A stretch of 64,000 nucleotides of DNA from the IMG/VR virus record IMGVR_UViG_3300007513_000001, positions 186,001 to 250,000 of that record. One strand, written 5' to 3'. The notes below the pieces were generated by a model. It was not told the origin of the DNA, did not search any database, and saw only the letters and a program-made list of their open reading frames with translations. Positions 19,420 to 59,672 of the stretch are shown here, one piece after another. Each line of letters begins with the position of its first letter. The first letter of the stretch is position 1. Made by a program: the position numbers and the translations under genes.

Positions 19420-20202
19420 ATGAGAGAAGCTCAACTTAGAAAATATATTCAGAAAATTATAAAAGAGCAAGCTAAAAAAGAACCTCAAGAAACTGAGAAG
19501 CTTAAAGGTGGTAGATACAAGAAGGAAATTGAATCCTTGAAACTTGTTCCCCCTGGCGAACTAATGAAACGCTTAAAAGCAAAGAAAGCATCGGGTGATT
19601 CGACCGGACAAAAGCTTGCTTCTTTTCTTGGTTCCGCTGCTGGTGGCGTAGAAGAAATGAGGCTAGTTTATGGTAAACCCATAAGAAAAGAAGACAAGGC
19701 CGGGCACCAGGGAGTATCAATCCCGCTCAATTCTATCAAGGGCGGAGCTGGAACAATTCCGCCAAGAGACGGAAGAAGATATATACAGCATACAGTAACT
19801 GCGGGTTTAGAATCTGGATATTTACCGCTCCCTAAAAAAGAAGTCCAAATAGAGATTTTTGGTAAGGGAGTTTTGGTATATGTGGCTAAAAAGAAATATT
19901 CGTGGGGCAAAGGAGAAAAGAAAAAAGAAGAAAAACCAAAAGATGAATCTCATCACGGAGTAGATGAAGAGCTTTTGGGTGAGCCAGATCTTTCGCAAGA
20001 AGATGAAAGGCAGGACGATGAAACAAAAGACGAATATAGTGTTTCAGCTAACGTAGCCGGAGTTGTAACGCCTCTTGGGACTGGACCTGACGGCGGAAAA
20101 GGAAAAAAGAAGAAAAATTCTCCAAGAAAAAGAGCGATAGACGCTAATAAAAGAGCTTTCGGAGGCGGAGAGATATACAAGCCCGCAAAGAAAAATAAAT
20201 AA
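19420..20202 (+). CDS. Hypothetical basic protein, possible internal virion protein
   Basis: N-terminal LRKYIQKIIKEQ motif shared with other ORFs; late-type motif upstream. Confidence 0.55.
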   Translation: MREAQLRKYIQKIIKEQAKKEPQETEKLKGGRYKKEIESLKLVPPGELMKRLKAKKASGDSTGQKLASFLGSAAGGVEEMRLVYGKPIRKEDKAGHQGVSIPLNSIKGGAGTIPPRDGRRYIQHTVTAGLESGYLPLPKKEVQIEIFGKGVLVYVAKKKYSWGKGEKKKEEKPKDESHHGVDEELLGEPDLSQEDERQDDETKDEYSVSANVAGVVTPLGTGPDGGKGKKKKNSPRKRAIDANKRAFGGGEIYKPAKKNK

Positions 20203-20244
20203 ATCGCTCTCGAAATCTTATATCTAATAATATAAGGTTCCAAC

Positions 20245-20685
20245 ATGAAAAAAACGAAACCACAATTCAACGTGGGCGATTTGATAGCAGTCTTTGGTGG
20301 AGAGATAAAACAAGAGACAGAAAGTGCCGACAAAGTTTATTTCTGTGAAATAATATCAGTCGGCCAAAGTGATCTAATGGTAGAAGAAAAGTCTGATTCT
20401 TATTCCGTTAGAAAGCTTTTTTATATAGTCCCTAAAGATATATGCGTTAAGATCGAAATTGATCCGACCGTTGTGGTCAAAGCGCGATGCTTGGAACCGA
20501 AGATTGGAGATTTAGTCCTTTCTTATATAAGAGAAGCGTTCAAAAAAGAAGAACCTGTTGAAATAACTGGAATATTGTATAAAATAGTTTATAAGTTCGG
20601 CCGGCCATCAAAAGCAACAATAATTCATGACAATGAAATGAAAGAAGTACCCTTTTCAAGTTTAATGGTTTTGCAAAGAAATTAA
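20245..20685 (+). CDS. Hypothetical protein (two SH3/KOW-like beta segments)
   Basis: Repeated F/P.vGDL motifs. Confidence 0.5.
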   Translation: MKKTKPQFNVGDLIAVFGGEIKQETESADKVYFCEIISVGQSDLMVEEKSDSYSVRKLFYIVPKDICVKIEIDPTVVVKARCLEPKIGDLVLSYIREAFKKEEPVEITGILYKIVYKFGRPSKATIIHDNEMKEVPFSSLMVLQRN

Positions 20686-20686
20686 A

Positions 20687-20715
20687 TTGAACAATTCACT
20701 ATAAAGTTATAGATT
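20687..20715 (+). promoter_or_regulatory. Sigma70-like promoter upstream of the SSB gene
   Basis: TTGAAC-N17-TAGATT. Confidence 0.6.
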
Positions 20716-20782
20716 TATTATGTGGTTATCTACCACACTTCAAACTAAAAATCTGCACATTTAAACATTTAAGGAGTTAAAA

Positions 20783-21592
20783 ATGGCAATCGATCTAGAT
20801 GCAATCCGCAAGAAGCTAAATCAGCTTTCTGGCAACAATTCAAAGCGTAATTCGATGTGGCGTCCCCAAGAGGGAGAAGATCACACAGTTCGAATTCTAG
20901 CTTTTTCTGATAACGACGGACAACCCTTTAAGGAGCGTTGGTTCTATTATAATATTGGCAACAATCCAGGCCTCCTTGCGCCTCACCAGTTTGGTCAACC
21001 AGATCCTATTCAAGATCTGATCAACACTCTTAGGAATGATGGAACTAAGGAGTCTTATGAGCTAGCTAAGAAGCTTTATCCAAAAATGCGAGCTTACGCT
21101 CCAGTGATTGTTCGAGGAGAAGAATCGCAAGGAGTTCGTCTCTGGTCTTTTGGAAAGACGGTGTATCAGTCACTTCTCAACTTGATGCTTGATGATGAAG
21201 TGGGCGATATTACAGATCCAACAACCGGCCGCGACATTAAAGTAACTTGCACGAAACCCCCCGGCCGGATGTGGGCCACGACTGAAGTTCGTCCTCGTAT
21301 GAGTACTTCGGATCTAGCAGAGAGCGCAAAGCAAGCTAAGCAGTGGCTCTCAGAAATTCCAGATTTGGATGATTTGTACCAATGCAAAACTTATGAAGAG
21401 TTGGAAACTATTGTTAACGCATGGCTCAACGGAGATACTGAAGAAAATTCTAACGACTATGGCTCCACTCGTGGAGGAAACACGACAACTCAGCCGAAAA
21501 CGCCTCAAACAACCGAGGCAGATAATTCTAAAATGGCTGAGAAGTATGCAAGTCTCGATGACGCTTTCGCTGATATCGAAAAAGATTTCTAA
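20783..21592 (+). CDS. ssDNA-binding protein (T4 gp32-like)
   Basis: W.P......VRIL, G..LW.FGK and DITDP..GRD motifs, plus an acidic C-terminal tail (LDDAFADIEKDF). Confidence 0.88.
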   Translation: MAIDLDAIRKKLNQLSGNNSKRNSMWRPQEGEDHTVRILAFSDNDGQPFKERWFYYNIGNNPGLLAPHQFGQPDPIQDLINTLRNDGTKESYELAKKLYPKMRAYAPVIVRGEESQGVRLWSFGKTVYQSLLNLMLDDEVGDITDPTTGRDIKVTCTKPPGRMWATTEVRPRMSTSDLAESAKQAKQWLSEIPDLDDLYQCKTYEELETIVNAWLNGDTEENSNDYGSTRGGNTTTQPKTPQTTEADNSKMAEKYASLDDAFADIEKDF

Positions 21593-21623
21593 GATATAGA
21601 TTAAAGCATCATCTTAATTTCGG

Positions 21624-21665
21624 GGCGCCGGCTTTCTTTAAAAGAGTTTAGCCGGCGCCTTTTTT
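21624..21665 (+). terminator. Intrinsic terminator after the SSB gene
   Basis: 10-bp stem GGCGCCGGCT / AGCCGGCGCC followed by T6. Confidence 0.85.
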
Positions 21666-21666
21666 G

Positions 21667-21695
21667 ATGAACATCGAAGACTCTTTTTTTATATT
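21667..21695 (+). promoter_or_regulatory. Sigma70-like promoter for the recA-exonuclease-helicase-RNR operon
   Basis: ATGAAC-N17-TATATT directly after the terminator. Confidence 0.55.
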
Positions 21696-21714
21696 ACAAT
21701 AGGAGAATTAATTT

Positions 21715-23863: not shown

Positions 23864-23871
23864 GAGTAATT

Positions 23872-35321: not shown

Positions 35322-35612
35322 ATGAATTCTTTACGTCTGTTAATTAGAGAGATTCTAAGAGAGCAAGTTGTTGGCTATACGCCGCCGTCTAAAGATGACG
35401 ATGACAATAGCGGTTATATAGAGTTTGGCGATTTGTCGGCACCTTCGAAAGAAAAAACTTCTGAAACAGAAGATCCAGAAGATCAAGAACAGCTAAGCGC
35501 GCAAGAGCAACAATTAACTCAGCAGCGCCAGCAAGACATAGACAAAAAAGACGCTAATGCTGTAAACTACGACGGAAGGGAACTACAAAGATTAAGAAAT
35601 TCAACAGGATAA
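35322..35612 (+). CDS. Hypothetical acidic protein, possible internal virion protein
   Basis: N-terminal LRLLIREILREQ motif. Confidence 0.55.
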   Translation: MNSLRLLIREILREQVVGYTPPSKDDDDNSGYIEFGDLSAPSKEKTSETEDPEDQEQLSAQEQQLTQQRQQDIDKKDANAVNYDGRELQRLRNSTG

Positions 35613-35665: not shown

Positions 35666-38600
35666 GTGAAGGTTCCTAGTAAGTTTTTTGGTTTGCATTC
35701 CCATTCTGGTTTTTCTATTTTTGATGGTCTTGGATACCCCCAAGAGCATATTGACTTTTGCCGCGAAAATGGATTAGATGGTTGGTCTTTGACCGATCAT
35801 GGTCATATGAACGGTTTTGCGCATGCTTATCTCCATACAGAAAAATTAAATAAAGCTGGAGGCAACTTTAAGCTTATTCCGGGTTGTGAAATGTATGTCC
35901 ACCCAGATTTAGACGTGTGGAAGCTAGATTATGAAATAAACAAAATGGCTAAAAAAGGCGACAAAGAAGCTTTGGATATTCTAAAAAAGCAAAGAGAAGC
36001 AATTCAAACTCCGCTTTTAGCTTTTGTAGATGAACACGATGAAACTTTAGATGTCGGTTTAGAGGGTGCCTCTTTAACTGTTGAAAACGAGGAAGAAACG
36101 AAATCAGGAAAATTTTACGATCCAATCAAACGTCGACACCATTTAGTAGTTTTACCGAAAACGTCTGAAGGTCTACAAAGGTTGTTTCATTTGATTTCTA
36201 GAGGGTACACAGAAGGATTCTATAGGTTTCCAAGAGTGGACTATAAGATGCTTAAAGAGGCAGCCAAGGGAGGCCATCTAATGGTTTCGACAGCTTGTAT
36301 TGGCGGCCCTTTAGCTTATGACGTATTTCAACCACTACAAGAAACTAACTTTGAAGATCTTATTCCTTCGCTTTTTGATGACGAATCTTTGAGAAATAAA
36401 ATTCTTTCTAAGTTTGAATATTCTTATGACCAGCTCGCAGACGCTGTTGGCGAAGAAAACGTTATGCTAGAACTTCAATTCAACAAGCTTCCAGCTCAGC
36501 ACTTAGTGAATAGAGCAATATTAGAATTTGCAAGAACACGGTCTTTAACCGACCAACTTGTCGTTACTTGCGATTCTCATTATGCTTCTCCAGAGCACTG
36601 GAAAGAAAGAGAACTCTATAAAAAGTTGGGCTGGCTAAATTATAAAAGCTTTAATCCAGACAATCTTCCAAAATCTAAAGACGATCTTAAGTGTGAGCTT
36701 TATCCTAAAAATGCTCAACAGGTGTGGGAATCTTATCTTGAAACTTCTGCTGAGCATGATTTTTATAATAGCGATGAAATATTTGAAGCTATCGAAAGAA
36801 CTCACGATGTAGCTCACGAAATGATTGGCGAGATACACCCAGACCGCAAAATGAAACTTCCGTCGTATGTCGTTCCAGAAGGGGTGACAGCAAATAAAGC
36901 TCTTTTAGAAGCTTCTAAAGAGGGGCTGGTCAAGCGAGGGCTAGCAAATAAGCCAGAATATGTGGAGCGGATGAAAACCGAGCTAAAAGTTATTTTTGAT
37001 AAAAACTTTTCTGAGTATTTTCTTACAATGAAAGCAATTATTGATTTAGCTCGAGAAAAAATGCTAGCTGGCCCAGGTCGAGGCTCTGGTGCGGGATCTT
37101 TAGTAAACTATGCACTGTATATTACGGATATCGATCCTGTAGAATATGGGCTTTTGTTTGAGCGTTTTATGTCTCCAGAGCGTACTGAAATGCCAGATAT
37201 CGATACAGATATTGCGGATAGAGATGAGCTCATCAAGATTCTTAGAAGTAATTTTGGAAATAAAAACGTAATTCCAATTTCAAATTACAATACTTTTAAA
37301 ATCAAGAGTCTTCTTAAAGATGTATCTAGGTTTTACGGCATTGAGTTTTCTGAAGTAAACAAAACTTTAGCTTCATTAGAAAGAGAAGTAGCCCAAGGAA
37401 GAAAAGCTGACGGCGTAGATGCAGCTTTTGATATTAGTTTTGAAGAAGCTAAAAAGTATTCTACGAAAGTCAGAGATTATCTAGAAAAATACCCGCAAAT
37501 TGCTGATCCTATAAACGTGTTATATAAGCAAAACAAGGCTCTCGGCCGACACGCTGGTGGAGTAATTGTATCTGAAAAGATCGAAGAAAGAATGCCGTTG
37601 ATTGTTGCTAGGGGAGAAATGCAAACTCCTTGGGTAGAAGGCATGAACTATAAACATCTAGAAGAATTTGGGTGGATCAAATTTGATTTACTTGGATTGG
37701 AAACACTTAGAATTATTGAGAGGACTATTTCTCTTGTTTTAGAAAAGTCTGGAATAGAAAATCCTTCTTTCGAGCAAATTGTTGAATGGTACAATTCTCA
37801 TATTGCTCCAAATGTGATAGATTTCAACGACCAAAAAGTTTATGAAAATGTTTATCACTCTGGAAGATGGGCTGGAATTTTTCAGTGTACTCAGCGAGGA
37901 GCTCAAGCGCTTTTCAAAAGAGCTAAGCCGGTAGGGTTAGTTGATTTGGCTACTTTGACTTCTATTTACCGACCAGGTCCACTGTCTGCCAAAGTAGACA
38001 AACTTTATATTAAGGCTAAAAACAATCCAGAAAATGTTTTTTATGGTCATCCATTGATTGAACAAGTTCTTAATTCAACTTATGGAATGATTATTTTTCA
38101 AGAGCAAGTAATGGAGCTTTGCCACGTGGTTGCTGGATTCCCTAAAGCTGAATGTAACAAACTTAGAAAAATGATGAAGCCAGTTGGTTCTGGTAATGAA
38201 AACATAAAGAAAGCTGCCGCCCTTAAGAATAAGTTTGTAGAAGGCGCATCAAAAAATGGTGTAGAGAAAAATATTGCTAGCGAGCTTTATGATAGGATTC
38301 TGTATTTCTCTGGGTACGGATTTAATAAGTCTCACGCGGTTTCTTATGCTGTGAACTCATATCATTGTGCATGGTTCATGACCTATTTTGAACAAGAGTG
38401 GATTCAAGCTTACTTAGAAGCATGTTCAGGAAATCCTAAAAAGCTTTCAAAGGCTTTAAGCGAAGTAAAGGCGCTTGGCTATAAAATAGTCCCAATTGAC
38501 ATTAATAAAGCTGGTAAAGCTTGGACTTGCATAGACGATAATTCTTTGATGCCCTCATTTTTGTCTTGCAAAGGTGTGGGCGCAGCAGCGGTTGAAGAAA

Positions 38601-40845: not shown

Positions 40846-41900
40846 TGAATTATTTTGTAGATTATGAATTACCAAAAAGTTGCAAAATCGGTATTGATGG
40901 ATTAGAGCGCAATATTCCAACTCGTAAACATAGTCACAACGCGGCTTGGGTTCATTTGTATAAAAACATGCTTCAATCTGCCGGCTGGGAAGACGTTCAC
41001 GTCTTGGGAAATCATGATACTTACGAAGGCTATGAAGCCATGATTTTTTATCCTGGAATTGCTTATTCGGGAGCCATTAATTTCTTTTTTGGAGTGGATG
41101 ATAATGTCGTTAGAAGATTTTCTAGAGTTCAAGACTTTGAAGGCCCGACATTTATTTTAAATCATGAAATGCCCCTTATCGGAAACACGATCAAAGGAAG
41201 ACTTCATAATAAATCTACTAGTAGTCGAGTTGGAAACCTTAAGCTAGACTTGTTAGACGATATCTGCAAGTCTACTCGTAGAATCGACTATGTAGAAAGA
41301 TCGAAAAAACTTTGTTTTGGAGACAGCCACTGCTTCTCAACTTATGCCCCCGGGTATTCTGTTTGTCGAAACGATGGTCTTACACTTTTTTCTACTTTAC
41401 GAAATGGAGTGAAGCAAACCATTGAAGAAAAATCGGGTATGATGACTAAAGATTTAACTCATCTTACGTTTTATATGGGTAATATTGATATTCGACATCA
41501 CCTCATGAGACAAGAAAACCCTTTTGAAAAAGCCCATGCAATGGGAATAGAATTGGGATACCAGCTTAAATCTTTAGGCATTCCAAACATAGAAATTGTT
41601 CACGTTCTTCCAATTGAAAATATTTCTCGAAAACTTCCAAAAACTGGCTACTATAAGAAGACTCCATATTTTGGAACTTGGGAAGAAAGAACCAAACTAG
41701 TCAATACATTTAACAACGCTGTGGATAAAATTTGTATAGAAAACAAATGGAATACTTTCCATTGGCCCGAAGAGTTTTTAAATGATTCTAAAGAGTTGGA
41801 TTTTGAATATATGGAGCGTCCAAAAAGTGTTCATTTAAGCCCAGTTTCTTATAGGTGGGATCTTTTTGAAAATAAATTAAATAGCTTGCATAGTAGCTAA
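40842..41900 (+). CDS. Conserved phage protein with an SGNH/GDSL-like C-terminal domain
   Basis: FGDSH (block I), G..L (block II), YMGNIDIRHH (block III) and SVHL (block V). Confidence 0.55.
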   Translation: MMNYFVDYELPKSCKIGIDGLERNIPTRKHSHNAAWVHLYKNMLQSAGWEDVHVLGNHDTYEGYEAMIFYPGIAYSGAINFFFGVDDNVVRRFSRVQDFEGPTFILNHEMPLIGNTIKGRLHNKSTSSRVGNLKLDLLDDICKSTRRIDYVERSKKLCFGDSHCFSTYAPGYSVCRNDGLTLFSTLRNGVKQTIEEKSGMMTKDLTHLTFYMGNIDIRHHLMRQENPFEKAHAMGIELGYQLKSLGIPNIEIVHVLPIENISRKLPKTGYYKKTPYFGTWEERTKLVNTFNNAVDKICIENKWNTFHWPEEFLNDSKELDFEYMERPKSVHLSPVSYRWDLFENKLNSLHSS

Positions 41901-41914
41901 AAATGGAGAAAAAT

Positions 41915-43105
41915 ATGCCAAAAAATAAATCAATTCGAGTTGCAATTGTCGGTGTCGGAAATTGCGCTAATTCTTTCTATCAAGGATTAACATATTATGC
42001 TGGATACACCGAAGGCCAAGAGCGCGACGGCGTTATGAAGAGCCGAATCGGAGGATATTCAGTAGCTGACCTCGATGTTGTAGCTGCGTTTGATATAGAC
42101 AAAAGAAAAGTCGGCAAGTGTTTTAGAGAAGCTATGTGGGCTAAACCAAACTGTACTCCAGAATATGAACCTAATGTTCCCGATGGTCCAATAGTTCAGA
42201 TGGGCCCAGTGTTAGATGGGGTACCGTCTTTGATGAAATCTTATCCAGACGATGAAGCTTTTAGACCAGCTGATTTAGAGCCCGTAGATGTGGCTCAGAT
42301 ATTAACAGACTTAAAGGTGGATATTCTAATCAACTATCTACCAGTGGGTTCTCAGAAGGCTACTGAGTGGTATGCAGAACAGTGTCTAAAGACGGGAGTT
42401 TCTCTTCTTAACTGTATTCCAGTCTTTATTGCTTCTAATCCAATTTGGGAACAGAAGTTTATTGATGCTGGAATTCCTTTGGTTGGGGACGATATGAAAT
42501 CTCAGTTTGGGGCGTCTATTTTATCTCAAATGCTGCAAGAATTAGCTTTCGCCCGAGGACTAAATGTGAATGCTCATATTCAGCGTAATGTTGGTGGAAA
42601 TACTGATTTCTTGAATATGGTCGATCAATCTAGGTTAAAGTATAAAAAGGTTTCTAAGGAAAATGTAATTCGATCTCAGCATGTTATCAGGGGAGTTGAT
42701 CCAGAAGAATCATTCTTACATGCTGGCCCTTCAGAATATATTCGTTTTTATGGAGATAACAAGGTTGCCAATTTTAGAGTAGAGATGGAAGGTTTCCTCG
42801 GCGCACCAGTAATTCTAGACGCGCAACTTTCCGTAATCGACTCTCCAAACTCTGGTGGAGTTGTTATCGACGCGGCTCGATATCTAAAGGTTGCGAGAGA
42901 AATGGGGATTGTTGGAGCTTTGCGTGGGCCATCTGCCTTTACGCAAAAAACCCCGCCCCAACAATTAATGTTTTCAGAAACTCTTTACGAATGCGACGCT
43001 CTTTCAGAGAGAAAGCTTACTAGATTTACAAAGAGGCAAACTCAAAATTACAGTGCGGAAGAGTTGTATCAATCTTGCCCAGCAGGAAACAAGGAAGTAG
43101 ATTAA
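41915..43105 (+). CDS. ino1: Myo-inositol-1-phosphate synthase (bacterial/archaeal type)
   Basis: VAIVGVGNCA, AFDID.RKVG, NYLPVGS, GDD.KSQ.GA, NVGGNTDFLNM, YGDNK and DSPNSGGVVIDA. Confidence 0.95.
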   Translation: MPKNKSIRVAIVGVGNCANSFYQGLTYYAGYTEGQERDGVMKSRIGGYSVADLDVVAAFDIDKRKVGKCFREAMWAKPNCTPEYEPNVPDGPIVQMGPVLDGVPSLMKSYPDDEAFRPADLEPVDVAQILTDLKVDILINYLPVGSQKATEWYAEQCLKTGVSLLNCIPVFIASNPIWEQKFIDAGIPLVGDDMKSQFGASILSQMLQELAFARGLNVNAHIQRNVGGNTDFLNMVDQSRLKYKKVSKENVIRSQHVIRGVDPEESFLHAGPSEYIRFYGDNKVANFRVEMEGFLGAPVILDAQLSVIDSPNSGGVVIDAARYLKVAREMGIVGALRGPSAFTQKTPPQQLMFSETLYECDALSERKLTRFTKRQTQNYSAEELYQSCPAGNKEVD

Positions 43106-50220: not shown

Positions 50221-51621
50221 ATGTCACGATTAACTATGAAAGAGAGATTCGAGCTTTTTGCGAAGTGTGGAGCTTTCGGAAATTTAGAAGATTTAATGCT
50301 TCAAGAATCCAGCGTTTCTTTTCTAATGATAGAACAATTAGAAAATGACGACGTTCAAAAACTTAGAACGTCTATTGCTAATAGTAAAAAGGTAGTAAAC
50401 CAAGCGAAATCATCTCTAGCTGATAAGTTTCCTAAATCTTTAGGACCTTATTTGTCTGGGCATGCTTCAAACCTTGACAAGGCTGAGCAGTTAGCTTCTA
50501 AAATAGATTTGTCTAACCCGGAAGGACTTAAGGGCATGCTTTCAAGCATGCTTGGCGGCAAAGTCGACGTCGGCAGAGCTCTTCAGGGAGTGTTAGAAAT
50601 TGAAGCACAGTCAAATCAATCGTTAGAAACTTTTAAAAATGCTATCGCCTTAATACACAGAAATCTTGATGGTAAGCTAGAAGACGACACGAAACTTTCG
50701 GAAATTCCAGCGGATGTGGGAATTACTTCAGATCAATTAAAAGACGCTGTTAAAAAAGCGTTTAAGGGAGCTGGCAAAAAAGGCGTATTCGCAAAGATGG
50801 CCGGCTTTTTTAAGAAAAAAGCGGCAGATATTCCTGGCGCTGAAGAGGTTGGAGAATTTCCAGCTGAAGAGTTTGCTACTGAACTTTTAGAATTACCGTT
50901 TAAAGAGCTGAAAGCTTTGGCTTCTGGCACGCAGAAATTAGAGCCTCCTGCGCCAAACGAAGATGCTATTACCGATGTAAATCAAAAAGCAGAAGAAGAA
51001 ACTACAGAAACCCCGGGAGAAGAAACTACAGAAACCCCGGGAGAAGACGCTGAAGAAACCCCTGGAGAAGATACTGAAGAGCCAGATGCTCCAGAAAACC
51101 CAGACCAAGAACAAGCGGAAAACGAAGCCGCTCTAGATGCGGCTGTTTCCGCTGAAGAAAACCAAGCCCAATCCCCCTTAAAAGCTGCCATGGACGCAGT
51201 TGATGGGTGGGTTAGTGGTCTTTCGCCATCATCTCAACAAACTCTCAAAAGAGGAAAAAGAGACGAAGAGCTTAAAACAGGGATTCAATCTGCCGTAGAG
51301 GACGTCGCCGGGGCTTTACAAAAAGCCGTGAAAGGCTCAATAGATAAGTGGGTTGGTACGCACGGTGAAACCCTTATTAAATCTAAACGTTTTAAGAAGG
51401 GAACTTTTGAAAATATGTCAGACACTATTGCTGACCTCATGGCCAATTTAATGATTTCCACTAACGAATCTGGAATACCACTTACTAAAAACAAGGTTCA
51501 AAAATCAGTTTATTCTTATTTAAACAGAAAATATTTGACTGATTACGATTCTATGATAAGTGAATCATCTAAAATTATGGATAGGTGGAATCATTTAGCG
51601 GGTTTAGATCATGAAAATTGA
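50221..51621 (+). CDS. Hypothetical protein with acidic repeats, probable internal virion protein
   Basis: EETTETPG repeats; C-terminal RWNHLAGL motif. Confidence 0.6.
   Translation: MSRLTMKERFELFAKCGAFGNLEDLMLQESSVSFLMIEQLENDDVQKLRTSIANSKKVVNQAKSSLADKFPKSLGPYLSGHASNLDKAEQLASKIDLSNPEGLKGMLSSMLGGKVDVGRALQGVLEIEAQSNQSLETFKNAIALIHRNLDGKLEDDTKLSEIPADVGITSDQLKDAVKKAFKGAGKKGVFAKMAGFFKKKAADIPGAEEVGEFPAEEFATELLELPFKELKALASGTQKLEPPAPNEDAITDVNQKAEEETTETPGEETTETPGEDAEETPGEDTEEPDAPENPDQEQAENEAALDAAVSAEENQAQSPLKAAMDAVDGWVSGLSPSSQQTLKRGKRDEELKTGIQSAVEDVAGALQKAVKGSIDKWVGTHGETLIKSKRFKKGTFENMSDTIADLMANLMISTNESGIPLTKNKVQKSVYSYLNRKYLTDYDSMISESSKIMDRWNHLAGLDHEN
50995..51084 (+). repeat. 24-bp tandem repeat (about 3.7 copies) encoding EETTETPG
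   Basis: GAAGAAACTACAGAAACCCCGGGA twice exactly, then degenerate copies. Confidence 0.85.
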
Positions 51622-51979
51622 TAAATTAGCTAATCGTCTCTTGCACGCAAGATATAAACAGCGGCTTCTTGAAGCGATATCAGAGGTAGATGTTGTAGAC
51701 GATCAAGGAAATATTATTATTGCTAAAGACTTAAAAGTTCGCCATAAAGATTCTGGTTACGAATATACGGTAGACGATGTAGTTGATGACGCCGGCGCAA
51801 TTAGTGTAGTTTTAAGAGAACCTTCAGAGCCCAGGTTTGAGCCGGCTGGCTCCGAAGCGCTATTGGGCTCTCCGCCAAACCAACAGCTTGATCTAAACGA
51901 AGACGACGCTGCCGAAGAAGAAGAGGTAGTTTTTATAGTAGACCAGGCAGAATTTGAAAAGGAGTACGAAGTCAAATGA
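51611..51979 (+). CDS. Hypothetical acidic protein
   Basis: Overlapping operon gene. Confidence 0.6.
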   Translation: MKIDKLANRLLHARYKQRLLEAISEVDVVDDQGNIIIAKDLKVRHKDSGYEYTVDDVVDDAGAISVVLREPSEPRFEPAGSEALLGSPPNQQLDLNEDDAAEEEEVVFIVDQAEFEKEYEVK

Positions 51980-52662
51980 GCAATTTAGAAAGAGATATAA
52001 AAAATCAAATTATTTCTGATTTGGGATTAGAAAATAGAGAGCTCTCTGAAGCTTATGTGACTCAAGCGAAGCAGTTTGAATTGAACACTGAATTATTGAG
52101 TTCGAAAACTAAGAAAGTTCAGCAAGAGATGATGAATGGTTATGTTGAAACTCTTAATCACGTTGCTGCTTCACTAGATACTGCCGCAGAAGACAACGCT
52201 AATTCAGATTCTTCAAAGTTCAGATCTTTAAAAATAGACGAAGTTTACAACATGAATGGTGCGTTTTTGTTCGGAATGCACTTTGAAAATATATCGGACC
52301 CTCAATCTAAAATAATGGTAGATTCTTTGACATTTATGCGCTTAGAGAGAGACTTTGGGACTTTTGATGAGTGGCAAAAAGATTTCATCGGTTGCGCCCT
52401 ATCATCTCGCTCGGGCTGGGTAGTGACAGTTTATAACGGGTTTTTAAATCGGTACATGAATGTCTGCATTGATTCTAACGATATTAGTGTACCACTCAAT
52501 TGTTATCCCCTTATAGTATTAAGCATGCACCCAGAGTCTTACGTGAGGGATTATCTGGGGGATAAGAAAGCCTATGTTTATGCGATGATGCAAGAATTTA
52601 AGTGGGACGTAGTAGAATCTAGATTCAAAAAATCTGATAAAATCAGCAAGGTGCTTAAATGA
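51976..52662 (+). CDS. Fe/Mn superoxide-dismutase homologue lacking metal ligands
   Basis: YV..LN, RDFGTFDEW..DF, GW, PL.VL, Y..DY...K..Y and W..V..RF are present, but the His/Asp ligands are replaced. Confidence 0.8.
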   Translation: MSNLERDIKNQIISDLGLENRELSEAYVTQAKQFELNTELLSSKTKKVQQEMMNGYVETLNHVAASLDTAAEDNANSDSSKFRSLKIDEVYNMNGAFLFGMHFENISDPQSKIMVDSLTFMRLERDFGTFDEWQKDFIGCALSSRSGWVVTVYNGFLNRYMNVCIDSNDISVPLNCYPLIVLSMHPESYVRDYLGDKKAYVYAMMQEFKWDVVESRFKKSDKISKVLK

Positions 52663-53318
52663 AAAGAGACGACCTAAAAGAATATTTCAGAAAATTTTAT
52701 TCTGACACTCTTTTGACTGAGCAAGATGATTTATTTGGCGATGACGAGAACGCAGATGATGAAGCGGCAGACGAAGAAGGCGATACTGAAGCTGAAGAAG
52801 AAGCAGCTCCAGAAGAGGAAGAAGAAGAAGAAGTAGAAATCGAAGCTGGAGACGAAGTCCGATTAAACAAGCCGTTCGAAGCTCAGATAGATTCAATTCT
52901 TTCAGATTTCGAAATGGATGCTCTAAAGAGTGCACAAATTAATGTTGTTGATTCTGAAGTTACCGCAGAGTCTAAATGGTGGAAAAAATCTCTTTCTAAT
53001 ATTTTGCTTGAGCAAGATGAAGAAGAAGTTACTACAGAAGCTGATATAGATTTAGATTTATTTGCATCTGATGTTGCTAGGCTTATTGGAAATTATGATG
53101 TTTTGTTAGACATGGAGTCGATTCTTTACAATAAAGCTAGAGAGCTGTTGGCGGTGAAGTATACTGAAGAAACTGCTGCTGCTTTCGATGAAATACTTCA
53201 AACTCGCTACGGGATAGAGTTAGCAAAACCTGTAGACGGTAAAGTTTCTTCTCCCGGAGAAGAAGTACAGCCCCCTCTTTCTGTGGGCGCAACTGGTGGA
53301 GAGGGCGGAGCAGCGTGA
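52659..53318 (+). CDS. Highly acidic hypothetical protein
   Basis: Glu/Asp-rich; LLTEQ and LLEQ motifs. Confidence 0.6.
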   Translation: MKRDDLKEYFRKFYSDTLLTEQDDLFGDDENADDEAADEEGDTEAEEEAAPEEEEEEEVEIEAGDEVRLNKPFEAQIDSILSDFEMDALKSAQINVVDSEVTAESKWWKKSLSNILLEQDEEEVTTEADIDLDLFASDVARLIGNYDVLLDMESILYNKARELLAVKYTEETAAAFDEILQTRYGIELAKPVDGKVSSPGEEVQPPLSVGATGGEGGAA

Positions 53319-54542: not shown

Positions 54543-56117
54543 ATGTCCTATTCTTTAAAAGACGTTTACGGTTTTAATAAAAAGAAATCTAACCCTAAAA
54601 AAGTCCGCGCAAGAGATGTTGCTAAGCTAATACTCAGAGAAGCTATTTTAATAGAACAAGAAGAATTAGCGAAACAAGTTCAGTCTGCTGGTGGAAAGCC
54701 TATTACTCTTGTTGTTCTTTATGGACCACCAGCGGCCGGAAAGGGAGCTGCGAAAAAAGATATAGGTACTTTCATAGGAGCTTCTGGCGAGAAAGATTTT
54801 GAGAAATGGCTAGAAGACATTGGAGACGAAGGAAACAAGCATTTCCAAGAAGAAGATGCCGCCATGGTAAATATAACTACAAAGCAAATGGCACCTGCAG
54901 TGTATGGAGAAATTTCTAAGAGAGTCTCTGCCGGAGAAAATTTTGACGACGTAGTTCAAGAATATTTTCATGTAAATGAATCTGGCAAAAAGTTTTCAGT
55001 TGCTGATATTTTAAGCAAATCAGCTTTCGATAAACTTGAAAAGTCTGGAGGCGCAGAAGAATTTGCAAATTTCCCTCAAACCCAGGCATTCTTTACACAA
55101 GCTAGAGGTTTTTCTAAGCCTGTTGAGGGTTTATCTGACGACGTTAATAAAATGATGGGCCCAAGTGACGATTCACCCACACTTGGCATTCGAGCAGCCG
55201 CCGCTGGCAGATACATGAAAGATGTAAAATCGGAACTTCAGGGAATGTTAAGCACTGAAGAAATCGGATCTACTCCCTATGCCACAGTCTATTTAGCGGA
55301 TCAAGCTGGAGAGTCTACAGCTGATACAGCTAGAATTGCAGCTCTTGGAAAAATGAAAGAAGATCCAGAATTTGACGCTCTTAAAATAATCGGTGTATAT
55401 ATTCATCAACCAGCTGAAAGAACAAGGATAGCCAATCTTCATAGAGCATCTACTGGCGGCCGCCGAGTTGCTCAAAAAGAAGTTGACCGTATCTTTAAAG
55501 CGGGTCCAGAGATCGGAGCTGATGGAAACCTTGTAAATAAAGGAGCTGCTCTCGAAGCAATGGAAGGCGCTGGATTTGATCAAATTCACTTATACCACCC
55601 GCCAGACCCATTTGATCCTGAGGGAGTTGAAGTTAATGGGCGCCCAATAGGTAATGCTATTTGCGAACCTCTTGGATCCGGCAAGGGCCACTTAGATATC
55701 GAGGGCTGTGATCAGGAATCTGAGGGATCAGCGACAGGCGCAAAATCATTGAAGGGGATGGAAAAATACGCAGTTAAGCAAGCTAAAATTCCTGATGAAG
55801 AAGTTGAAGCAGCCGGTGGCGGAATTCCCGAAGATTTAGAAGCTGAAGAAAAAGAAAAGATAATTGCTGCTTTTAACAAAATGGGCTTCAGCGGAGTTTC
55901 AAGTGGAGATTTAGACAGCTACCTTACTACTTTAGCACCACCCAACGTAAGAGGTGCTTCTAAGCATGGAAAAGTCCCGTGGGCTGGTGATTTATTTGGA
56001 AAAGGAACAAATCCAACTGAGAAAATCACGCTTAAAGGAGAAAATGCCAGAAGTCAAAAGACTCAAGACGATGTTCTTCTTGAAAGGTGGCAACGCCTCG
56101 CGGGTTTACTTAAGTAG
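54543..56117 (+). CDS. P-loop kinase (zeta-toxin/AAA_33-like)
   Basis: VVLYGPPAAGKG Walker A and N..R...GGR.V lid motif; C-terminal RWQRLAGL. Confidence 0.6.
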   Translation: MSYSLKDVYGFNKKKSNPKKVRARDVAKLILREAILIEQEELAKQVQSAGGKPITLVVLYGPPAAGKGAAKKDIGTFIGASGEKDFEKWLEDIGDEGNKHFQEEDAAMVNITTKQMAPAVYGEISKRVSAGENFDDVVQEYFHVNESGKKFSVADILSKSAFDKLEKSGGAEEFANFPQTQAFFTQARGFSKPVEGLSDDVNKMMGPSDDSPTLGIRAAAAGRYMKDVKSELQGMLSTEEIGSTPYATVYLADQAGESTADTARIAALGKMKEDPEFDALKIIGVYIHQPAERTRIANLHRASTGGRRVAQKEVDRIFKAGPEIGADGNLVNKGAALEAMEGAGFDQIHLYHPPDPFDPEGVEVNGRPIGNAICEPLGSGKGHLDIEGCDQESEGSATGAKSLKGMEKYAVKQAKIPDEEVEAAGGGIPEDLEAEEKEKIIAAFNKMGFSGVSSGDLDSYLTTLAPPNVRGASKHGKVPWAGDLFGKGTNPTEKITLKGENARSQKTQDDVLLERWQRLAGLLK

Positions 56118-56138
56118 CTAGAAGTTTAATATTTTCAT

Positions 56139-56588: not shown

Positions 56589-56626
56589 CTTTCATCTACA
56601 TACTTAGTTATGTTCACGGAGTCATT

Positions 56627-57667
56627 ATGCCCAAGAGTAAAAGATCCAACTTATTAAAAACGATAGACAGCATTCTGTTCGAAGACGTATGGCAAAAGTA
56701 CGGTTCCGAATATATGTCTCATCCAATGGATCAAAAAGATTTTGAAGATACCACAGTACCACCAAGCTTGCCCATACAAGCTTTGGATCAAATGGCAACT
56801 CAGCTTACAGTAGAGCGTCCGCCAGTTGAAGATCCCGATTATATTCCTGATGGCGTAGAAGAGCTTTCTAGATCTGCTAGCACCCTTGCGCAGCAAGTTC
56901 CGAGAGATCAAGTCGCTTTTTTCTACGAGAAGATAAAAAAAGATTTAGAAGTTGCAATTGAAAATGAAAACAATCCAGAAACAGTAACTACTAAAAAAGA
57001 AGAAGAAGAGGCGGAAGAAGCTTCGCAGGCAGTTGAAAAAATGGACGAAACTAAAAACTTAAGAAGATATTTAAAAGGTTTGCTAAAAGAACAAGGTCGA
57101 GGACCTTCTGATTGGTCTCAGTTTAAACTGGGTAAACATTATGATGAAGATGAGCCAGAGGAATGGGAACTAGAAGACGAAGATCCACAACCCGCTGGAG
57201 GCTCTAATAAAGATACTATAAAGGGCAAACACATAGCAAAATACTACGGGAAAGCTGGTCCATCAGGAGTAAACGTATCTAGCGATAGATTAATGCAGAA
57301 TTTTCTCGCCCCACTTTTTAGCGTACCCTCAGAAGATTTAAGAGATGCAATGGATTATATTCGTTATTTCTATCGCGAGCACGCTACCGGAGAAGAGCCA
57401 CAAGGATCTGAGCAGTCATTTGTGAGTTATGTTCTTAAAAAAGTGGTGAAAGATTTAGTTAAAAAGAATCCTGACATAACTCAAACTCTTTTGCCTGCGG
57501 TTGTACAGCACGTTAAAGAAATGCCAGATAAACAATTTTCAAAACTCATAGACAAAGCTTCGAAAGAATCTTCTAGTGAAATTAAAGCTAGGGGAGAACT
57601 TGCGGATACTTTAGAAAGAGAAGATCCAGAACAATTTGAGGTCCTTCAAGATTTAGGGCTAGCTTAA
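56627..57667 (+). CDS. Hypothetical protein, probable virion protein
   Basis: Late-type motif upstream; internal LRRYLKGLLKEQ motif. Confidence 0.55.
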   Translation: MPKSKRSNLLKTIDSILFEDVWQKYGSEYMSHPMDQKDFEDTTVPPSLPIQALDQMATQLTVERPPVEDPDYIPDGVEELSRSASTLAQQVPRDQVAFFYEKIKKDLEVAIENENNPETVTTKKEEEEAEEASQAVEKMDETKNLRRYLKGLLKEQGRGPSDWSQFKLGKHYDEDEPEEWELEDEDPQPAGGSNKDTIKGKHIAKYYGKAGPSGVNVSSDRLMQNFLAPLFSVPSEDLRDAMDYIRYFYREHATGEEPQGSEQSFVSYVLKKVVKDLVKKNPDITQTLLPAVVQHVKEMPDKQFSKLIDKASKESSSEIKARGELADTLEREDPEQFEVLQDLGLA

Positions 57668-58047
57668 TGAACCTTCAAGATGTCTTAAAAGAGTATTTTG
57701 AAACTGAAGATTCTCCAAGGTCTTCTTTGAATGAGAGCATGGGCATGTTTTGTTCAGTTCCGGTGCAGCCAACGCAAAGAGACGATTGGGAAGTTGTGGC
57801 TAGTCCAAACCGCTTGAATAAAACATATGAATTTGAAAATTCGCAAATTCTTAAAGCTTTTTTACTAGAAATGCTAGACTATCAAGAGTCTGTTTCTCAT
57901 CATGGTAAATTTATTGTAGATTATCCAAAGGTCACCGTAGAAGTATATACACATGATCTAGACGATGTCACTGAAATAGATTTGGAATGGTCAAAAATGG
58001 CTGACAATATATACAGAGACGTTAATGACTATGCCCCAAGATACTGA
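57667..58047 (+). CDS. Pterin-4a-carbinolamine dehydratase-like protein
   Basis: W......L.K.Y.F, HH and V.V...THD...VT..D pattern. Confidence 0.75.
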   Translation: MNLQDVLKEYFETEDSPRSSLNESMGMFCSVPVQPTQRDDWEVVASPNRLNKTYEFENSQILKAFLLEMLDYQESVSHHGKFIVDYPKVTVEVYTHDLDDVTEIDLEWSKMADNIYRDVNDYAPRY

Positions 58048-58441
58048 TCCAGAGTTGTCTAGAGTCCTTTCGAATCCAGACAACTTGATAATAAGCGAGT
58101 CTCTTCTAGAGAGGCTTCCGACAAAAAAAGAGCCCCTACTACAAAGATGCAGTTTAAAAATTAACGACGCTTTGTATTCTGGTTTTTGTTTGCAGATAAA
58201 TTTTCAAAAAGATAAAGCAAAAATTTCTATAGAGCTAGAATCTAATGAGCCTAAATTTAAATTTATAGATTCTAATTTTCCAAATTCTCTCTTTCAGCAC
58301 CGCGTTTCTATTACGTTAGACGAAGAAGAAAAAATCATAACTGGTAAACTGCTTGAAGTTTCTTATGATTTATCTCTAAGCTCTAAATGTATAATGTCGT
58401 TAGAGATATATAATTACCAATTGGAGGGTCATCATGGCTGA
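58025..58441 (+). CDS. Hypothetical protein
   Basis: ORF track; overlaps both neighbours. Confidence 0.45.
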   Translation: MTMPQDTDPELSRVLSNPDNLIISESLLERLPTKKEPLLQRCSLKINDALYSGFCLQINFQKDKAKISIELESNEPKFKFIDSNFPNSLFQHRVSITLDEEEKIITGKLLEVSYDLSLSSKCIMSLEIYNYQLEGHHG

Positions 58442-58604
58442 TGAATTCGATTTTTCTAAATTCGTGAAAGATATAGAAAAAAGAGAGAACGAAGCTAAAA
58501 AGAAAAGGCTTCAACATCAAGAAGGTCAAAAAGACCATCCTATTAGAAAGCTGAATATTCTCACTAGAGAACTATGGCAAAATCGTATTAAATGGAGAAA
58601 ATAA
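58434..58604 (+). CDS. Small 56-aa protein missing from the ORF track (MADEFDFSKFVKDIEKRE...NRIKWRK)
   Basis: GGAGG SD 6 nt upstream; its TAA overlaps the ATG of the next gene (TAATG); fills the apparent gap exactly. Confidence 0.75.
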   Translation: MADEFDFSKFVKDIEKRENEAKKKRLQHQEGQKDHPIRKLNILTRELWQNRIKWRK

Positions 58605-59254
58605 TGAATTTTTCTCAATTAGACGAAATAACAAAATCTTCAGTAACGCAAGCTATTAAAGAATTATACACTCAGCTGCTAGAAGAAAAAGAACAAACAA
58701 CACAACATAAAACATCTTCTGAAATAGATGACCTCAATCTTAGAGCTAAAAAAGAAGCTCAATCTACCGATGAAGAAGAAGAAGAAGAAAAAGTAGTAGT
58801 AAAATCTACATCTACTGAAAAAGCTTCTTCAGAAGAAAAACCTGAAATCGTCGTTCCTGAAAAGCTGCCTGACGTTTTAGAGCCAGAATCTATCATTAAA
58901 TCTATAAACGTGATAAGATCTGGAAACTCTTTAAAAGATGCGGGCGTTCAAGAGAGATTCCAAATTTATTTTGATAAATTAGATCCCGCAGAAAAAGTAG
59001 CTCTTAAGGGATTTTTAGACGGGCTCGCCCAAGTTATAGCTGGTGATATACCTGGACAAGATGCTGTTGCACCTTCGTCTCCGCCATATAACGTCTCAAT
59101 GAAAGACAAACCTTTACAAAAAAAATCTAGCGCTAAATCATCTCCAGATGCTGGGCTTGCTGTCGGCAATAGCCAACCAGACGCTCCTATTATTGTCGGA
59201 GAAAGTGCTAATAAACAATGGGTTAAAAATGTATTCTCAAAAAATAAAAAATAG
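58604..59254 (+). CDS. Hypothetical acidic protein
   Basis: TAATG coupling; N.IRSG.SL segment; LLEE motif. Confidence 0.6.
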   Translation: MNFSQLDEITKSSVTQAIKELYTQLLEEKEQTTQHKTSSEIDDLNLRAKKEAQSTDEEEEEEKVVVKSTSTEKASSEEKPEIVVPEKLPDVLEPESIIKSINVIRSGNSLKDAGVQERFQIYFDKLDPAEKVALKGFLDGLAQVIAGDIPGQDAVAPSSPPYNVSMKDKPLQKKSSAKSSPDAGLAVGNSQPDAPIIVGESANKQWVKNVFSKNKK

Positions 59255-59261
59255 TCTTTTT

Positions 59262-59390
59262 GGCGGGCGGCCGTTCCTATCTCAGGTCGACCATAGGTTA
59301 AGCTACATTTCGCTACTTTCTGGTGCTTCTCCCAGCGACTTAAGTCGCTATCAACCCCAAGCAGGATAGTTAGCTAGCCGGTCGTCCGCC
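59262..59390. ncRNA. Candidate structured non-coding RNA
   Basis: GC-rich intergenic island closed by a 12-bp helix, with several internal hairpins. Confidence 0.45.
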
Positions 59391-59411
59391 TCTTATATAG
59401 TAGATAAAATA

Positions 59412-59672
59412 ATGAAAACTCTTAGAAAACTAATAAAAGAAATGATTGCCCAAGAAGATTCTTGGAGAAGGGTGGATGGCTCTGTAGTTCCGTTTGGCTG
59501 CCCAGAGTGCGTTGATGATATTACTGGTAGAATAGAAGATACTTCTACGCTAAGAGATCAAATACCTAAGGGGTCTGCAGATCGCGCTCATTTAAATGGC
59601 GTGTTAGCTTTTTTAAGAAAAAAGAACAGACAAGCTCAAAAACTTACGCATAATTTTGAGGATAATCTGTAA
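59412..59672 (+). CDS. Hypothetical protein with CxxC
   Basis: N-terminal LRKLIKEMI motif; CPEC. Confidence 0.55.
   Translation: MKTLRKLIKEMIAQEDSWRRVDGSVVPFGCPECVDDITGRIEDTSTLRDQIPKGSADRAHLNGVLAFLRKKNRQAQKLTHNFEDNL

What the first reader, a model, noticed from the sequence alone, without database searches (positions are those of the whole stretch)
19420..59672. Family of unrelated ORFs sharing short targeting/processing motifs
An amphipathic motif LRxxI(K/R)xxLxEQ recurs: LRKYIQKIIKEQ (19420), LRLLIREILREQ (35322), LRKLIKEMIAQE (59412), LRRYLKGLLKEQ (in the 56627 ORF), LILREAILIEQE (54543) and LSNILLEQ (52659). A C-terminal RWxxLAGL ends both the 50221 and 54543 ORFs. (L/I)xE is the T4 prohead-protease cleavage preference. 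Inference: these are capsid-targeting or cleavage signals marking a set of packaged, possibly injected, proteins.
Basis: partly seen in the sequence, partly recalled or inferred. Interest (0 to 1): 0.6.

Follow-up and report, generated by a model that had tools for sequence, protein, structure and literature searches.

The report
Shared capsid-loading leader tags, jumbo phage
About one gene in ten of this 293-kb uncultured T4-like phage begins with the same short helical leader ending in a T4-protease cutting site. It is most likely a postal code that loads dozens of unrelated proteins into the capsid, a greatly expanded version of a trick known from phage T4; this is not yet shown by experiment.

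Summary
The window is part of a 293-kb circular T4-like phage genome that has a gp21-type prohead protease, a gp22-like scaffold and two gp23-like capsid genes.

Four of the six N-motif instances (ORFs at 19420, 35322, 59412, and internal in 56627) belong to a 14-residue leader, consensus MNLLREYIRELLxE. A related second leader has the consensus MKITKRQLRRIIKEE. Together they head 39-46 otherwise unrelated ORFs per genome (10-12%) here and in two relatives. The instances in 54543 and 52659 do not fit.

**Properties of the leader:**
- It always ends in L/I-x-E, the T4 gp21 cleavage motif.
- Internal copies in fusion proteins are flanked by such sites on both sides.
- Each phage lineage has its own version of the leader, while orthologous cargo stays 62-70% identical.
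- Conserved head-module proteins next to the protease carry it.

**C-terminal tail.** RWxxLAG(L/I) is confirmed. It is also the conserved tail of the scaffold protein, including in a cultured Flavobacterium phage.

**Best reading (confidence 0.55).** This is an expanded T4-style capsid-targeting and processing system. There is no direct evidence of packaging or cleavage. I rate it a new variant of a known kind.

The parts
19420..20202 (+). ORF (260 aa) with an N-terminal class A leader (residues 1-17, nt 19420-19470) and a lysine-rich C-terminal part. The true start is ATG 19420, not GTG 19393.
   Evidence: Translation. Scores 20.2 bits with the outside-trained matrix. The ortholog in relative G002 (122 aa) also has a leader plus a K-rich tail. 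No Pfam or PHROG family.
35322..35612 (+). ORF (96 aa) with a class A leader at residues 1-15 (nt 35322-35366), followed by an acidic, Q-rich part. It lies just upstream of the DNA polymerase gene.
   Evidence: 14.5 bits. In relative G001 the ortholog is the C-terminal part of a 205-aa fusion, and there it is preceded by a class-B-type leader. The two leader classes are therefore interchangeable.
59412..59672 (+). ORF (86 aa) with a class A leader at residues 1-15 (nt 59412-59456).
   Evidence: 13.5 bits. Orthologs in G002 and G001 have different N-terminal leaders that still end in hydrophobic-x-E.
56627..57667 (+). ORF (346 aa) with an internal class A leader (residues 145-155, nt 57059-57091), preceded by M-D-E (nt 57041-57049). 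It also has a leader-like N-terminus ending in L-F-E (residues 9-19).
   Evidence: 21.8 bits, the best in the window. The upstream hydrophobic-x-E fits the flanking-site pattern of internal leaders.
54543..56117 (+). ORF (524 aa), a P-loop protein with a possible zeta-toxin/AAA_33-like kinase fold.
   Evidence: Tail statistics. No score with the leader matrix. The Atlas match is a lead only, score 0.88. No Pfam hit.
50221..51621 (+). ORF (466 aa), acidic with short acidic repeats, ending in the RWNHLAGL tail (nt 51583-51606) plus 4 residues.
   Evidence: The ortholog in G001 (457 aa) ends in the same kind of tail.
52659..53318 (+). ORF (219 aa), very acidic and scaffold-like. It is conserved as hydrophobic-hydrophobic-E in two orthologs, as is an N-terminal L-x-E site.
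   Evidence: No score with the leader matrix.

Best explanation
The leaders are removable capsid-targeting propeptides of the T4 type. A 14-16-residue amphipathic N-terminal helix docks the protein to the assembling prohead core. Two interchangeable classes occur here: class A, consensus MNLLREYIRELLxE, and class B, consensus MKITKRQLRRIIKEE.

Once the shell closes, the gp21-type prohead protease cuts after the final L/I-x-E and frees the mature protein inside the head, from where it can be ejected with the DNA. In fusion proteins the internal leaders act as spacers that are cut on both sides, so one polyprotein delivers several enzymes.

The C-terminal RWxxLAG(L/I) tail is a second, independent anchor. 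It is copied from the scaffold protein and attaches a few extra proteins (window ORFs 50221 and 54543) to the same partner that the scaffold tail binds. In several of them it is released by an L/I-x-E site placed just before it.

Shown: the motif statistics, the gene content, the flanking sites and the lineage-specific leader versions. Inferred: docking, cleavage, packaging and ejection.
For: 1. **T4-type head machinery is present.** Peptidase_S77 protease, 84.7 bits; 31% identical to T4 gp21 with the ...HP... and ...SSRG... motifs aligned. Two gp23-like capsid genes. A scaffold-position ORF whose N-terminus ends ..AIAE|A, like T4 gp22 ..LIAE|A. The capsid protein keeps L-R-E|A at residue 61, where T4 gp23 is cut after L-T-E (residue 65) (PMC9026906).
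2. **The leader ends in the protease motif.** P3 is L36/I5/V1 and P1 is E in 39 of 41 class A sites. In the ortholog alignment A1 only M1, L4, E6 and E14 of the leader are invariant. The T4 gp21 motif is L/I-x-E (PMC9026906).
3. **It sits on unrelated proteins**. These include a CCA-adding nucleotidyltransferase, PAP2, DUF192 and GNAT-like domains.
4. **Internal leaders are flanked.** They are preceded by hydrophobic-x-E in 11 of 20 cases against a 0.10 background, P about 9e-7. In the 923-aa fusion a half-decayed internal leader keeps both sites and aligns with the N-terminal leader of the stand-alone ortholog.
5. **Conserved head-module proteins beside the protease carry class-B-type leaders.** They score 27.5, 19.2, 14.2 and 14.6 bits, with 0-0.1 expected. 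One family also ends in a scaffold-like tail.
6. **The tail is the scaffold's own tail.** RWxxLAG(L/I) ends the scaffold in all four genomes and in cultured Flavobacterium phage immuto. Several proteins carry both a leader and this tail.
7. **Each lineage has its own leader version.** Leaders are 55-73% identical within a genome across unrelated proteins, but 33-38% between clades, while orthologous cargo is 62-70% identical. This is what a shared phage-encoded receptor predicts.
8. **Selection acts on the protein.** The identical-codon fraction at identical residues is 0.42-0.64.
9. **Co-occurrence.** All 9 large leader-bearing contigs tested encode the protease.
10. **Precedent.** T4 internal proteins are diverse, sharing only a conserved 10-residue targeting sequence that gp21 removes (PMC3012670, PMC9026906, PMC5694885).
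Against: - No virion proteome, cleavage data or expression timing exists for this uncultured lineage.
- Tagging 10-12% of all genes is far more than in T4.
- The class B array lies in the genome sector where sigma-70-type promoters cluster (13-64 kb), so these may be early cytoplasmic proteins.
- Window ORFs 19420 and 35322 sit in the replication module.
- The T4 late promoter is not enriched, and a candidate late motif is not conserved in a relative.
- Most cargo is acidic, unlike the basic T4 internal proteins.
- No sequence similarity to the T4 targeting sequence was established.
- Mature cargo is only weakly depleted in L/I-x-E (observed/expected 0.79-1.09 against 1.18-1.22 for other proteins).
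Confidence: 0.55

Rival explanations
1. The leader is a docking or oligomerisation helix used in the cytoplasm. It would bring many accessory proteins to one hub, which could be a phage or host protein, a membrane or a multi-enzyme complex. No packaging or cleavage is involved.
For: - It is an amphipathic helix followed by a low-confidence linker in the model.
- Fusions of tagged proteins fit the logic that fused proteins are partners.
- Lineage-specific leader versions fit any shared receptor.
- The class B array lies in the sector with early-type promoters.
- An Hsp70 gene lies next to the class A array.
Against: - It does not explain the near-invariant L/I-x-E end or the second cleavage-type site upstream of internal copies.
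- It does not explain the retained L-T-E|A in a decayed internal leader.
- It does not explain the leader on head-module proteins, or its coupling with the scaffold tail.
- The Hsp70 is absent from all three relatives.
Confidence: 0.2
2. The leader is a turnover or regulation tag. An N-terminal degron, read by a host AAA+ protease or by the phage protease outside the capsid, would limit the lifetime or control the activation of many accessory proteins.
For: The pattern of N-terminal Met, a basic residue and then hydrophobic residues resembles some ClpX N-terminal recognition motifs (my own recollection, not tested). The tag is on many small accessory proteins in arrays.
Against: - Internal copies in fusions would not work as N-degrons, yet they are conserved between genomes.
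- Head-module proteins carry the leader.
- The L/I-x-E end is unexplained.
Confidence: 0.08
3. The conservation serves a nucleic-acid or gene-mobility function. The 5' coding segment could be a recombination cassette that shuffles genes, or a translation-initiation enhancer, and the peptide itself has no role.
For: - The codons for the I-R pair of class A are ATA-AGA in about 80% of copies, against 30-36% and 50% genome-wide. The first R is mostly CGN.
- Leaders were clearly exchanged between genes.
- A-rich first codons are typical of well-translated genes.
Against: - Leucine and other codons vary freely. The identical-codon fraction is only 0.42-0.64 at identical residues.
- Different lineage versions keep the hydrophobic periodicity and the final E.
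- Internal copies far from any start codon are conserved.
Confidence: 0.07
4. The motif is chance, or the last trace of one old paralogous family, with no present common function.
For: Short amphipathic helices rich in L, I, R, K and E are common.
Against: - Counts are 10- to 30-fold above shuffles or more.
- The position is fixed, with the leader's first L three residues after the start Met.
- Cargo domains belong to unrelated Pfam families.
- Leader versions follow the genome rather than the gene.
Confidence: 0.03

Closest known systems
[quoted passage not shown]
   Same: A short N-terminal peptide (10-20 residues) is shared by otherwise unrelated proteins. It ends in L/I-x-E, is removed by the gp21 prohead protease, and loads proteins into the scaffolding core for later ejection (PMC3012670, PMC9026906, PMC5694885). 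This phage has the same protease family, a gp22-like scaffold and a gp23-like capsid protein.
   Different: - The sequence differs and is longer (14-16 residues), with two classes plus lineage-specific versions.
- About 40 tagged genes per genome, against a handful in T4.
- Tagged multi-domain fusions with internal, doubly flanked leaders.
- The cargo is mostly acidic.
- A second, C-terminal tag exists.
- Function is not shown experimentally here.
Proteolytically matured head and ejection proteins of giant phages phiKZ, 201phi2-1 and SPN3US
   Same: Dozens of head-internal proteins are processed by a diverged gp21-type protease after a glutamate. The propeptides are thought to anchor proteins during assembly (PMC9026906, PMC5694885, PMC10052503).
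   Different: In those phages the cleavage motif is S/A/G-x-E. The propeptides are often longer than 100 residues, and no shared leader sequence has been described. Here the protease and capsid genes are T4-type and the leader is a discrete, repeated tag.
Scaffold C-terminal tails that bind the capsid shell (P22, herpesvirus UL26/UL26.5); from my own knowledge, not tested here
   Same: A short C-terminal peptide of the scaffold mediates incorporation. In herpesviruses the same tail is shared by two proteins and is released by a protease site just upstream. Here RWxxLAG(L/I) ends the scaffold and 2-4 further proteins per genome, often directly after L/I-x-E.
   Different: The binding partner of the tail is unknown here; the complex prediction with the capsid protein gave no verdict. 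T4 gp22 itself lacks this tail.
Encapsulin cargo-loading peptides; from my own knowledge
   Same: A short terminal peptide directs diverse enzymes into an HK97-fold protein shell.
   Different: Encapsulins are not viruses. Their peptides are not removed by a protease and have different sequences. This is an analogy only.
Phage P1 Dar system (DarA/Hdf-dependent loading of anti-restriction proteins into the head)
   Same: Accessory, host-directed proteins are incorporated into the head during assembly and ejected (PMC9024508, PMC12810830; titles and abstracts seen).
   Different: In P1, loading depends on specific partner proteins, not on a common leader peptide. No homology was found.

Membership tests
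T4-type capsid targeting sequence (CTS) system | The genome encodes a gp21-type (Peptidase_S77) prohead protease together with gp22-like scaffold and gp23-like capsid genes | tested here: met
   PF03420 at 84.7 bits. 31% identity to T4 gp21 with catalytic-region motifs aligned. PF07068 at 212 bits, twice. The scaffold-position ORF has a gp22-like N-terminus.
T4-type capsid targeting sequence (CTS) system | The tag is a short peptide at the extreme N-terminus (10-20 residues) | tested here: met
   The leader's first L lies three residues after the start Met in most class A copies. 31 of 42 class A sites are N-terminal, and almost all class B copies are. The internal copies are in fusion ORFs.
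T4-type capsid targeting sequence (CTS) system | The tag ends in the gp21 cleavage motif L/I-x-E | tested here: met
   P3 is L36/I5/V1 and P1 is E in 39 of 41. E14 is invariant in alignment A1.
T4-type capsid targeting sequence (CTS) system | The tag is shared by proteins that are otherwise unrelated | tested here: met
   BLAST with the motif masked. 69 class-B mature parts fall into 60 clusters. The cargo has unrelated Pfam domains.
T4-type capsid targeting sequence (CTS) system | Sequence similarity of the tag to the T4 IP targeting sequence | tested here: inconclusive
   Only the general form (Met, polar residues, hydrophobic residues, then L/I-x-E) is shared with the T4 gp22 and gp24 N-termini read. 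The peptides are too short for a homology test, and I did not read the T4 IP genes themselves.
T4-type capsid targeting sequence (CTS) system | Tagged proteins are present in proheads or virions and lack the tag there | not testable with these tools
   The lineage is uncultured. There are no relatives in GenBank phages for cargo or class B proteins. No proteome is available.
T4-type capsid targeting sequence (CTS) system | The tag alone is sufficient to load a foreign protein | not testable with these tools
   This needs a cultured phage and genetics.
Scaffold-tail-mediated incorporation (RWxxLAG tail) | The tail is the conserved extreme C-terminus of the scaffold protein across relatives | tested here: met
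   Scaffold-position ORFs of G000, G001, G002, G004 and Flavobacterium phage immuto gp067 all end in it.
Scaffold-tail-mediated incorporation (RWxxLAG tail) | The tail binds the capsid protein (or portal) | tested here: inconclusive
   Complex prediction of the capsid protein with the last 65 scaffold residues scored 0.01, which the tool reports as no verdict.

The most novel reading that the evidence does not exclude
An uncultured lineage of 170-290-kb T4-like phages uses a lineage-specific peptide 'postal code' to load about 40 different proteins into the capsid. These are single enzymes, small acidic proteins and self-cleaving polyproteins, making up a tenth of the gene set. The phage would then inject a ready-made protein arsenal with its DNA. 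Because the leader evolves in concert with its unknown receptor in the prohead core, co-variation could identify how capsid targeting sequences are recognised.
Probability: 0.45. Interest if true: 0.8.

Novelty: new variant of a known kind. Interest (0 to 1): 0.66.

Why it matters
If the tags do what their anatomy suggests, these phages carry by far the largest tagged cargo set known for a T4-type head. The cargo would include enzymes such as a CCA-adding tRNA nucleotidyltransferase and polyproteins cut up inside the capsid.

- This would change estimates of how much of a jumbo phage's accessory genome acts as pre-made injected protein rather than as genes expressed after entry.
- The lineage-specific leader versions give a natural co-variation data set for finding the receptor of capsid targeting sequences, which is still unidentified even in T4.
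- Short, portable loading tags and a matching release site are also directly useful for engineering protein delivery by phage capsids.

Tried and rejected
1. **T4 late promoter.** TATAAATA occurs 8 times on each strand and is not placed before head genes, so it is not usable for timing.
2. **Candidate late motif.** ATATTTA(T/C) lies 25-50 nt upstream of the portal, scaffold, two large structural ORFs, window ORF 19420 and one array ORF. It occurs 23 times on the plus strand and 18 on the minus strand. It is absent from such places in relative G001. Inconclusive and dropped.
3. **Generic promoter scan.** The sigma-70 and terminator scan of the class A array gave 24 sites against 26.8 in shuffles. 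No information.
4. **Complex prediction.** Capsid protein with the scaffold tail gave no verdict, score 0.01. This is not evidence either way.
5. **Hsp70 as the leader's receptor.** The gene next to the array has no counterpart in G001, G002 or G004. Rejected as a general explanation.
6. **Family and literature searches.** Pfam and PHROG scans of about 45 tagged proteins found no family covering either leader. A full-text search for the motif strings found nothing relevant.
7. **GenBank phages.**
   - No DNA match to the window.
   - No protein match for a class B protein or the most conserved cargo.
   - The scaffold matches only Flavobacterium phage immuto.
   - The first 50 kb and the head module of immuto show no leader arrays.
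8. **Depletion of L/I-x-E in mature cargo.** The effect is weak and is not used as evidence.
9. **Structure model of the conserved cargo.** Mean pLDDT was 63. That is too low for a fold search, so none was run.
10. **Not used.** The large protein searches (search for homologous proteins, the search of protein representatives) and the read-mapping tools were not used, because no claim here rests on absence of relatives or on reads. No alternative genetic code was used.

Full report
**Where the window lies.** The window is bases 186001-250000 of a 293,409-bp virus record. Its 'terminal repeat' is only 38 bp. I therefore treat the record as a circular or permuted genome, and one ORF runs across the junction. 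The genome has T4-type head genes just upstream of the window:
- a large terminase and a portal;
- a Peptidase_S77 prohead protease, 84.7 bits, 31% identical to T4 gp21 with the His- and Ser-containing motifs aligned;
- a 562-aa ORF in the scaffold position, whose N-terminus ends ..AIAE|A like T4 gp22;
- two tandem gp23-like capsid genes.

The capsid protein is only distantly related to cultured phages: 37-47% identity to a Microcystis phage, Flavobacterium phage immuto and metagenomic huge phages. Inside the window, 18-47 kb is a replication and nucleotide-metabolism module. The region 50-58 kb holds acidic proteins of unknown function and a superoxide-dismutase-like ORF.

**Checking the observation.**
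- A simple pattern for the motif gives 14 hits in the proteome against 0.49 in shuffles. Most hits lie outside the window and at the extreme N-terminus, with the first L three residues after the start Met.
The instances in ORFs 54543 and 52659 do not score.
- The C-terminal RWxxLAGL is confirmed and extended. There are exactly three proteins with it, all at the extreme C-terminus, and the third is the scaffold-position ORF.

**The system is much larger than the window.** Homologs of one array gene led to 11 related IMG/VR loci. In these, 10-20 consecutive, different ORFs all start with the same 14 residues. I fetched three relatives whole: G001 (284 kb), G002 (289 kb) and G004 (175 kb). Two leader classes emerge.
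- **Class A** has the consensus MNLLREYIRELLxE.
- **Class B** has the consensus MKITKRQLRRIIKEE and heads arrays of small, mostly acidic proteins. In this genome it forms a block of more than 20 ORFs at 47.6-57 kb.
- The classes are interchangeable. The ortholog of window ORF 35322 in G001 carries a class-B-type leader.
- With thresholds that let through about 0.1 false hit per proteome, 39 of 387, 40 of 363 and 46 of 371 ORFs carry a leader.
- The mature parts are unrelated. Masked BLAST finds two pairs among 19 class A proteins, and 69 class B mature parts form 60 clusters.
- Where domains are recognisable they differ: DUF192, a CCA-adding nucleotidyltransferase head domain, PAP2 and a weak GNAT signal.
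- No Pfam or PHROG model covers the leaders, and the motif strings occur in no relevant paper.
- Exact class A strings occur in about 18 IMG/VR contigs. Class B strings reach the 80-locus return limit.

**Evidence on function.**
1. *The end of the leader is the T4 gp21 cleavage motif.* In class A the third-last residue is L, I or V in all 42 sites, and the last is E in 39 of 41. T4 gp21 cuts after L/I-x-E (PMC9026906).
2. *Internal leaders are flanked.* Those in long ORFs are preceded by a second hydrophobic-x-E site in 11 of 20 cases, against a background of 0.10, P about 9e-7.
3. *Internal leaders are former N-termini.* The 923-aa ORF at genome 286576-289347 is DUF192, leader, CCA-adding enzyme, decayed leader, a domain that is a stand-alone tagged ORF elsewhere, a leader-like site, then PAP2. 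The decayed leader aligns with the intact N-terminal leader of the G001 ortholog and keeps both cleavage-type sites. The junction-spanning ORF shows the same, and it is fused in G001 too.
4. *Leaders follow the genome, not the gene.* In the alignment of the most conserved cargo, mature parts are 62-70% identical. The leader reads LLREYIRELL in one clade and LLMEQWRQFI or LLENWKHFL in another, with only M1, L4, E6 and E14 fixed. Mean leader identity is 0.55-0.73 within a genome and 0.33-0.38 to G004. This concerted change points to a common phage-encoded reader.
5. *Selection is on the peptide.* Synonymous codons vary. The ATA-AGA pair is over-used, which may reflect recent gene conversion.
6. 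*There are links to the head.*
   - Two small conserved ORFs beside the protease score with the class B matrix at 14-27 bits with 0-0.1 expected.
   - One of those two families ends in a scaffold-like tail.
   - The RWxxLAG(L/I) tail ends the scaffold in all four genomes and in cultured Flavobacterium phage immuto, but not in T4 gp22.
   - ParB-like proteins (DGHHRW motif) in G001 and G002 carry both a leader and the tail, often with L/I-x-E directly before the tail.
7. *Co-occurrence.* All nine large leader-bearing contigs tested have the protease. These contigs are related, so this is a necessary condition met rather than independent proof.

**Most likely mechanism.** The pattern matches the T4 capsid targeting sequence. 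There, a 10-residue N-terminal peptide is shared by otherwise diverse internal proteins, docks them to the scaffolding core and is removed by gp21. Its cargo is ejected into the host (PMC3012670, PMC9026906, PMC5694885). I propose the same here, in three parts:
- N-terminal leaders dock the cargo and are removed by the protease.
- Internal leaders in polyproteins are excised as spacers.
- The scaffold-derived C-terminal tail is a second anchor, used by window ORFs 50221 and 54543.

The sequence anatomy and statistics are shown. Docking, cleavage, packaging and ejection are inferred.

**Reasons for caution.**
- No data show that any tagged protein is in a virion or is cut.
- The tagged set is very large.
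- The class B array lies in the sector where extended -10 sigma-70-type promoters cluster, and window ORFs 19420 and 35322 sit among replication genes. Early cytoplasmic roles are therefore possible.
- Attempts to time expression through promoter motifs failed.
- The complex prediction gave no verdict.
- The structure model (helix at residues 3-13, then a low-confidence linker) is only weakly informative, at pLDDT 63.

**Rivals.** I considered a cytoplasmic docking helix, a degron, a nucleic-acid-level cassette, and chance or paralogy. Each explains part of the data. None explains the invariant L/I-x-E end together with the doubly flanked internal copies and the head-module links.

**Comparison with what is known, and verdict.** In how it works, this is closest to the T4 targeting-sequence system. 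The membership features I could test are met: the protease family, the N-terminal position, the cleavage motif and the unrelated cargo. The experimental ones cannot be tested here. It differs in the leader sequence and length, in having two classes and lineage-specific versions, in scale (about 40 genes against a handful), in tagged polyproteins, and in a second tag copied from the scaffold. I rate it a new variant of a known kind, with interest 0.66 and confidence 0.55 in the mechanism.

Noticed in passing
L011:10269-12167 and L011:12261-14150 (genome 176269-180150, just upstream of the window): Two tandem gp23-like major capsid genes are 86% identical. Their N- and C-terminal thirds are identical, and the differences are concentrated in residues 120-360. 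A GC-rich hairpin lies between them.
   Followed up: partly
window 51976-52662 (+): ORF with an Fe/Mn superoxide dismutase C-terminal domain (E 3e-12). It lies between the tail-bearing and acidic ORFs, and is conserved in the same place in relatives G001 and G002 (47-57% identity).
   Followed up: partly
L003:7624-9498 (genome 281033-282907): A full-length Hsp70/DnaK homolog (832 bits) lies immediately upstream of the class A leader array. No counterpart exists in relatives G001, G002 or G004.
   Followed up: yes
L003:13167-15938 (genome 286576-289347): A 923-aa fusion ORF combines DUF192, a CCA-adding tRNA nucleotidyltransferase, an unknown domain (also found as a stand-alone ORF elsewhere) and a PAP2 phosphatase. 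The domains are separated by leader-like spacers.
   Followed up: yes
genome 7335-44386, 245667-245697 (window 59667-59697) and 280386-280416: A recurrent promoter-like pair: CTGTAAAA, followed 22 nt later by TGGTATAAT (extended -10). There are about 10 copies, mostly at 7-45 kb. One copy in the window sits just after ORF 59412 and before ORF 59723.
   Followed up: no
window 18164-19396 and 35666-39265: Two separate ORFs match DNA polymerase families, with the leader-bearing ORFs 19420 and 35322 next to them. Flavobacterium phage immuto likewise has two 'DNA polymerase family A' genes about 36 kb apart. A small ORF after the first starts with a leader-like peptide ending in L-V-E.
   Followed up: no
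L053 (G002 15191-17047, minus strand) and L055 (G002 41818-42363, minus strand): Two ORFs in a relative end with a complete class A leader followed at once by a stop codon. This could be a leader without cargo, a frameshifted junction, or a C-terminal use of the tag.
   Followed up: no
genome 1-38 and 293372-293409: The 'direct terminal repeat' of the record is only 38 bp. A leader-bearing 515-aa ORF reads through the junction, so the record is best treated as a circular or permuted assembly.
   Followed up: yes
L015:8421-8690, L016:7751-8391, L017:7927-8576: In the G004-type clade several class-B-led small proteins consist almost entirely of lysine/arginine runs after the leader. They look like DNA-condensing internal proteins.
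   Followed up: no
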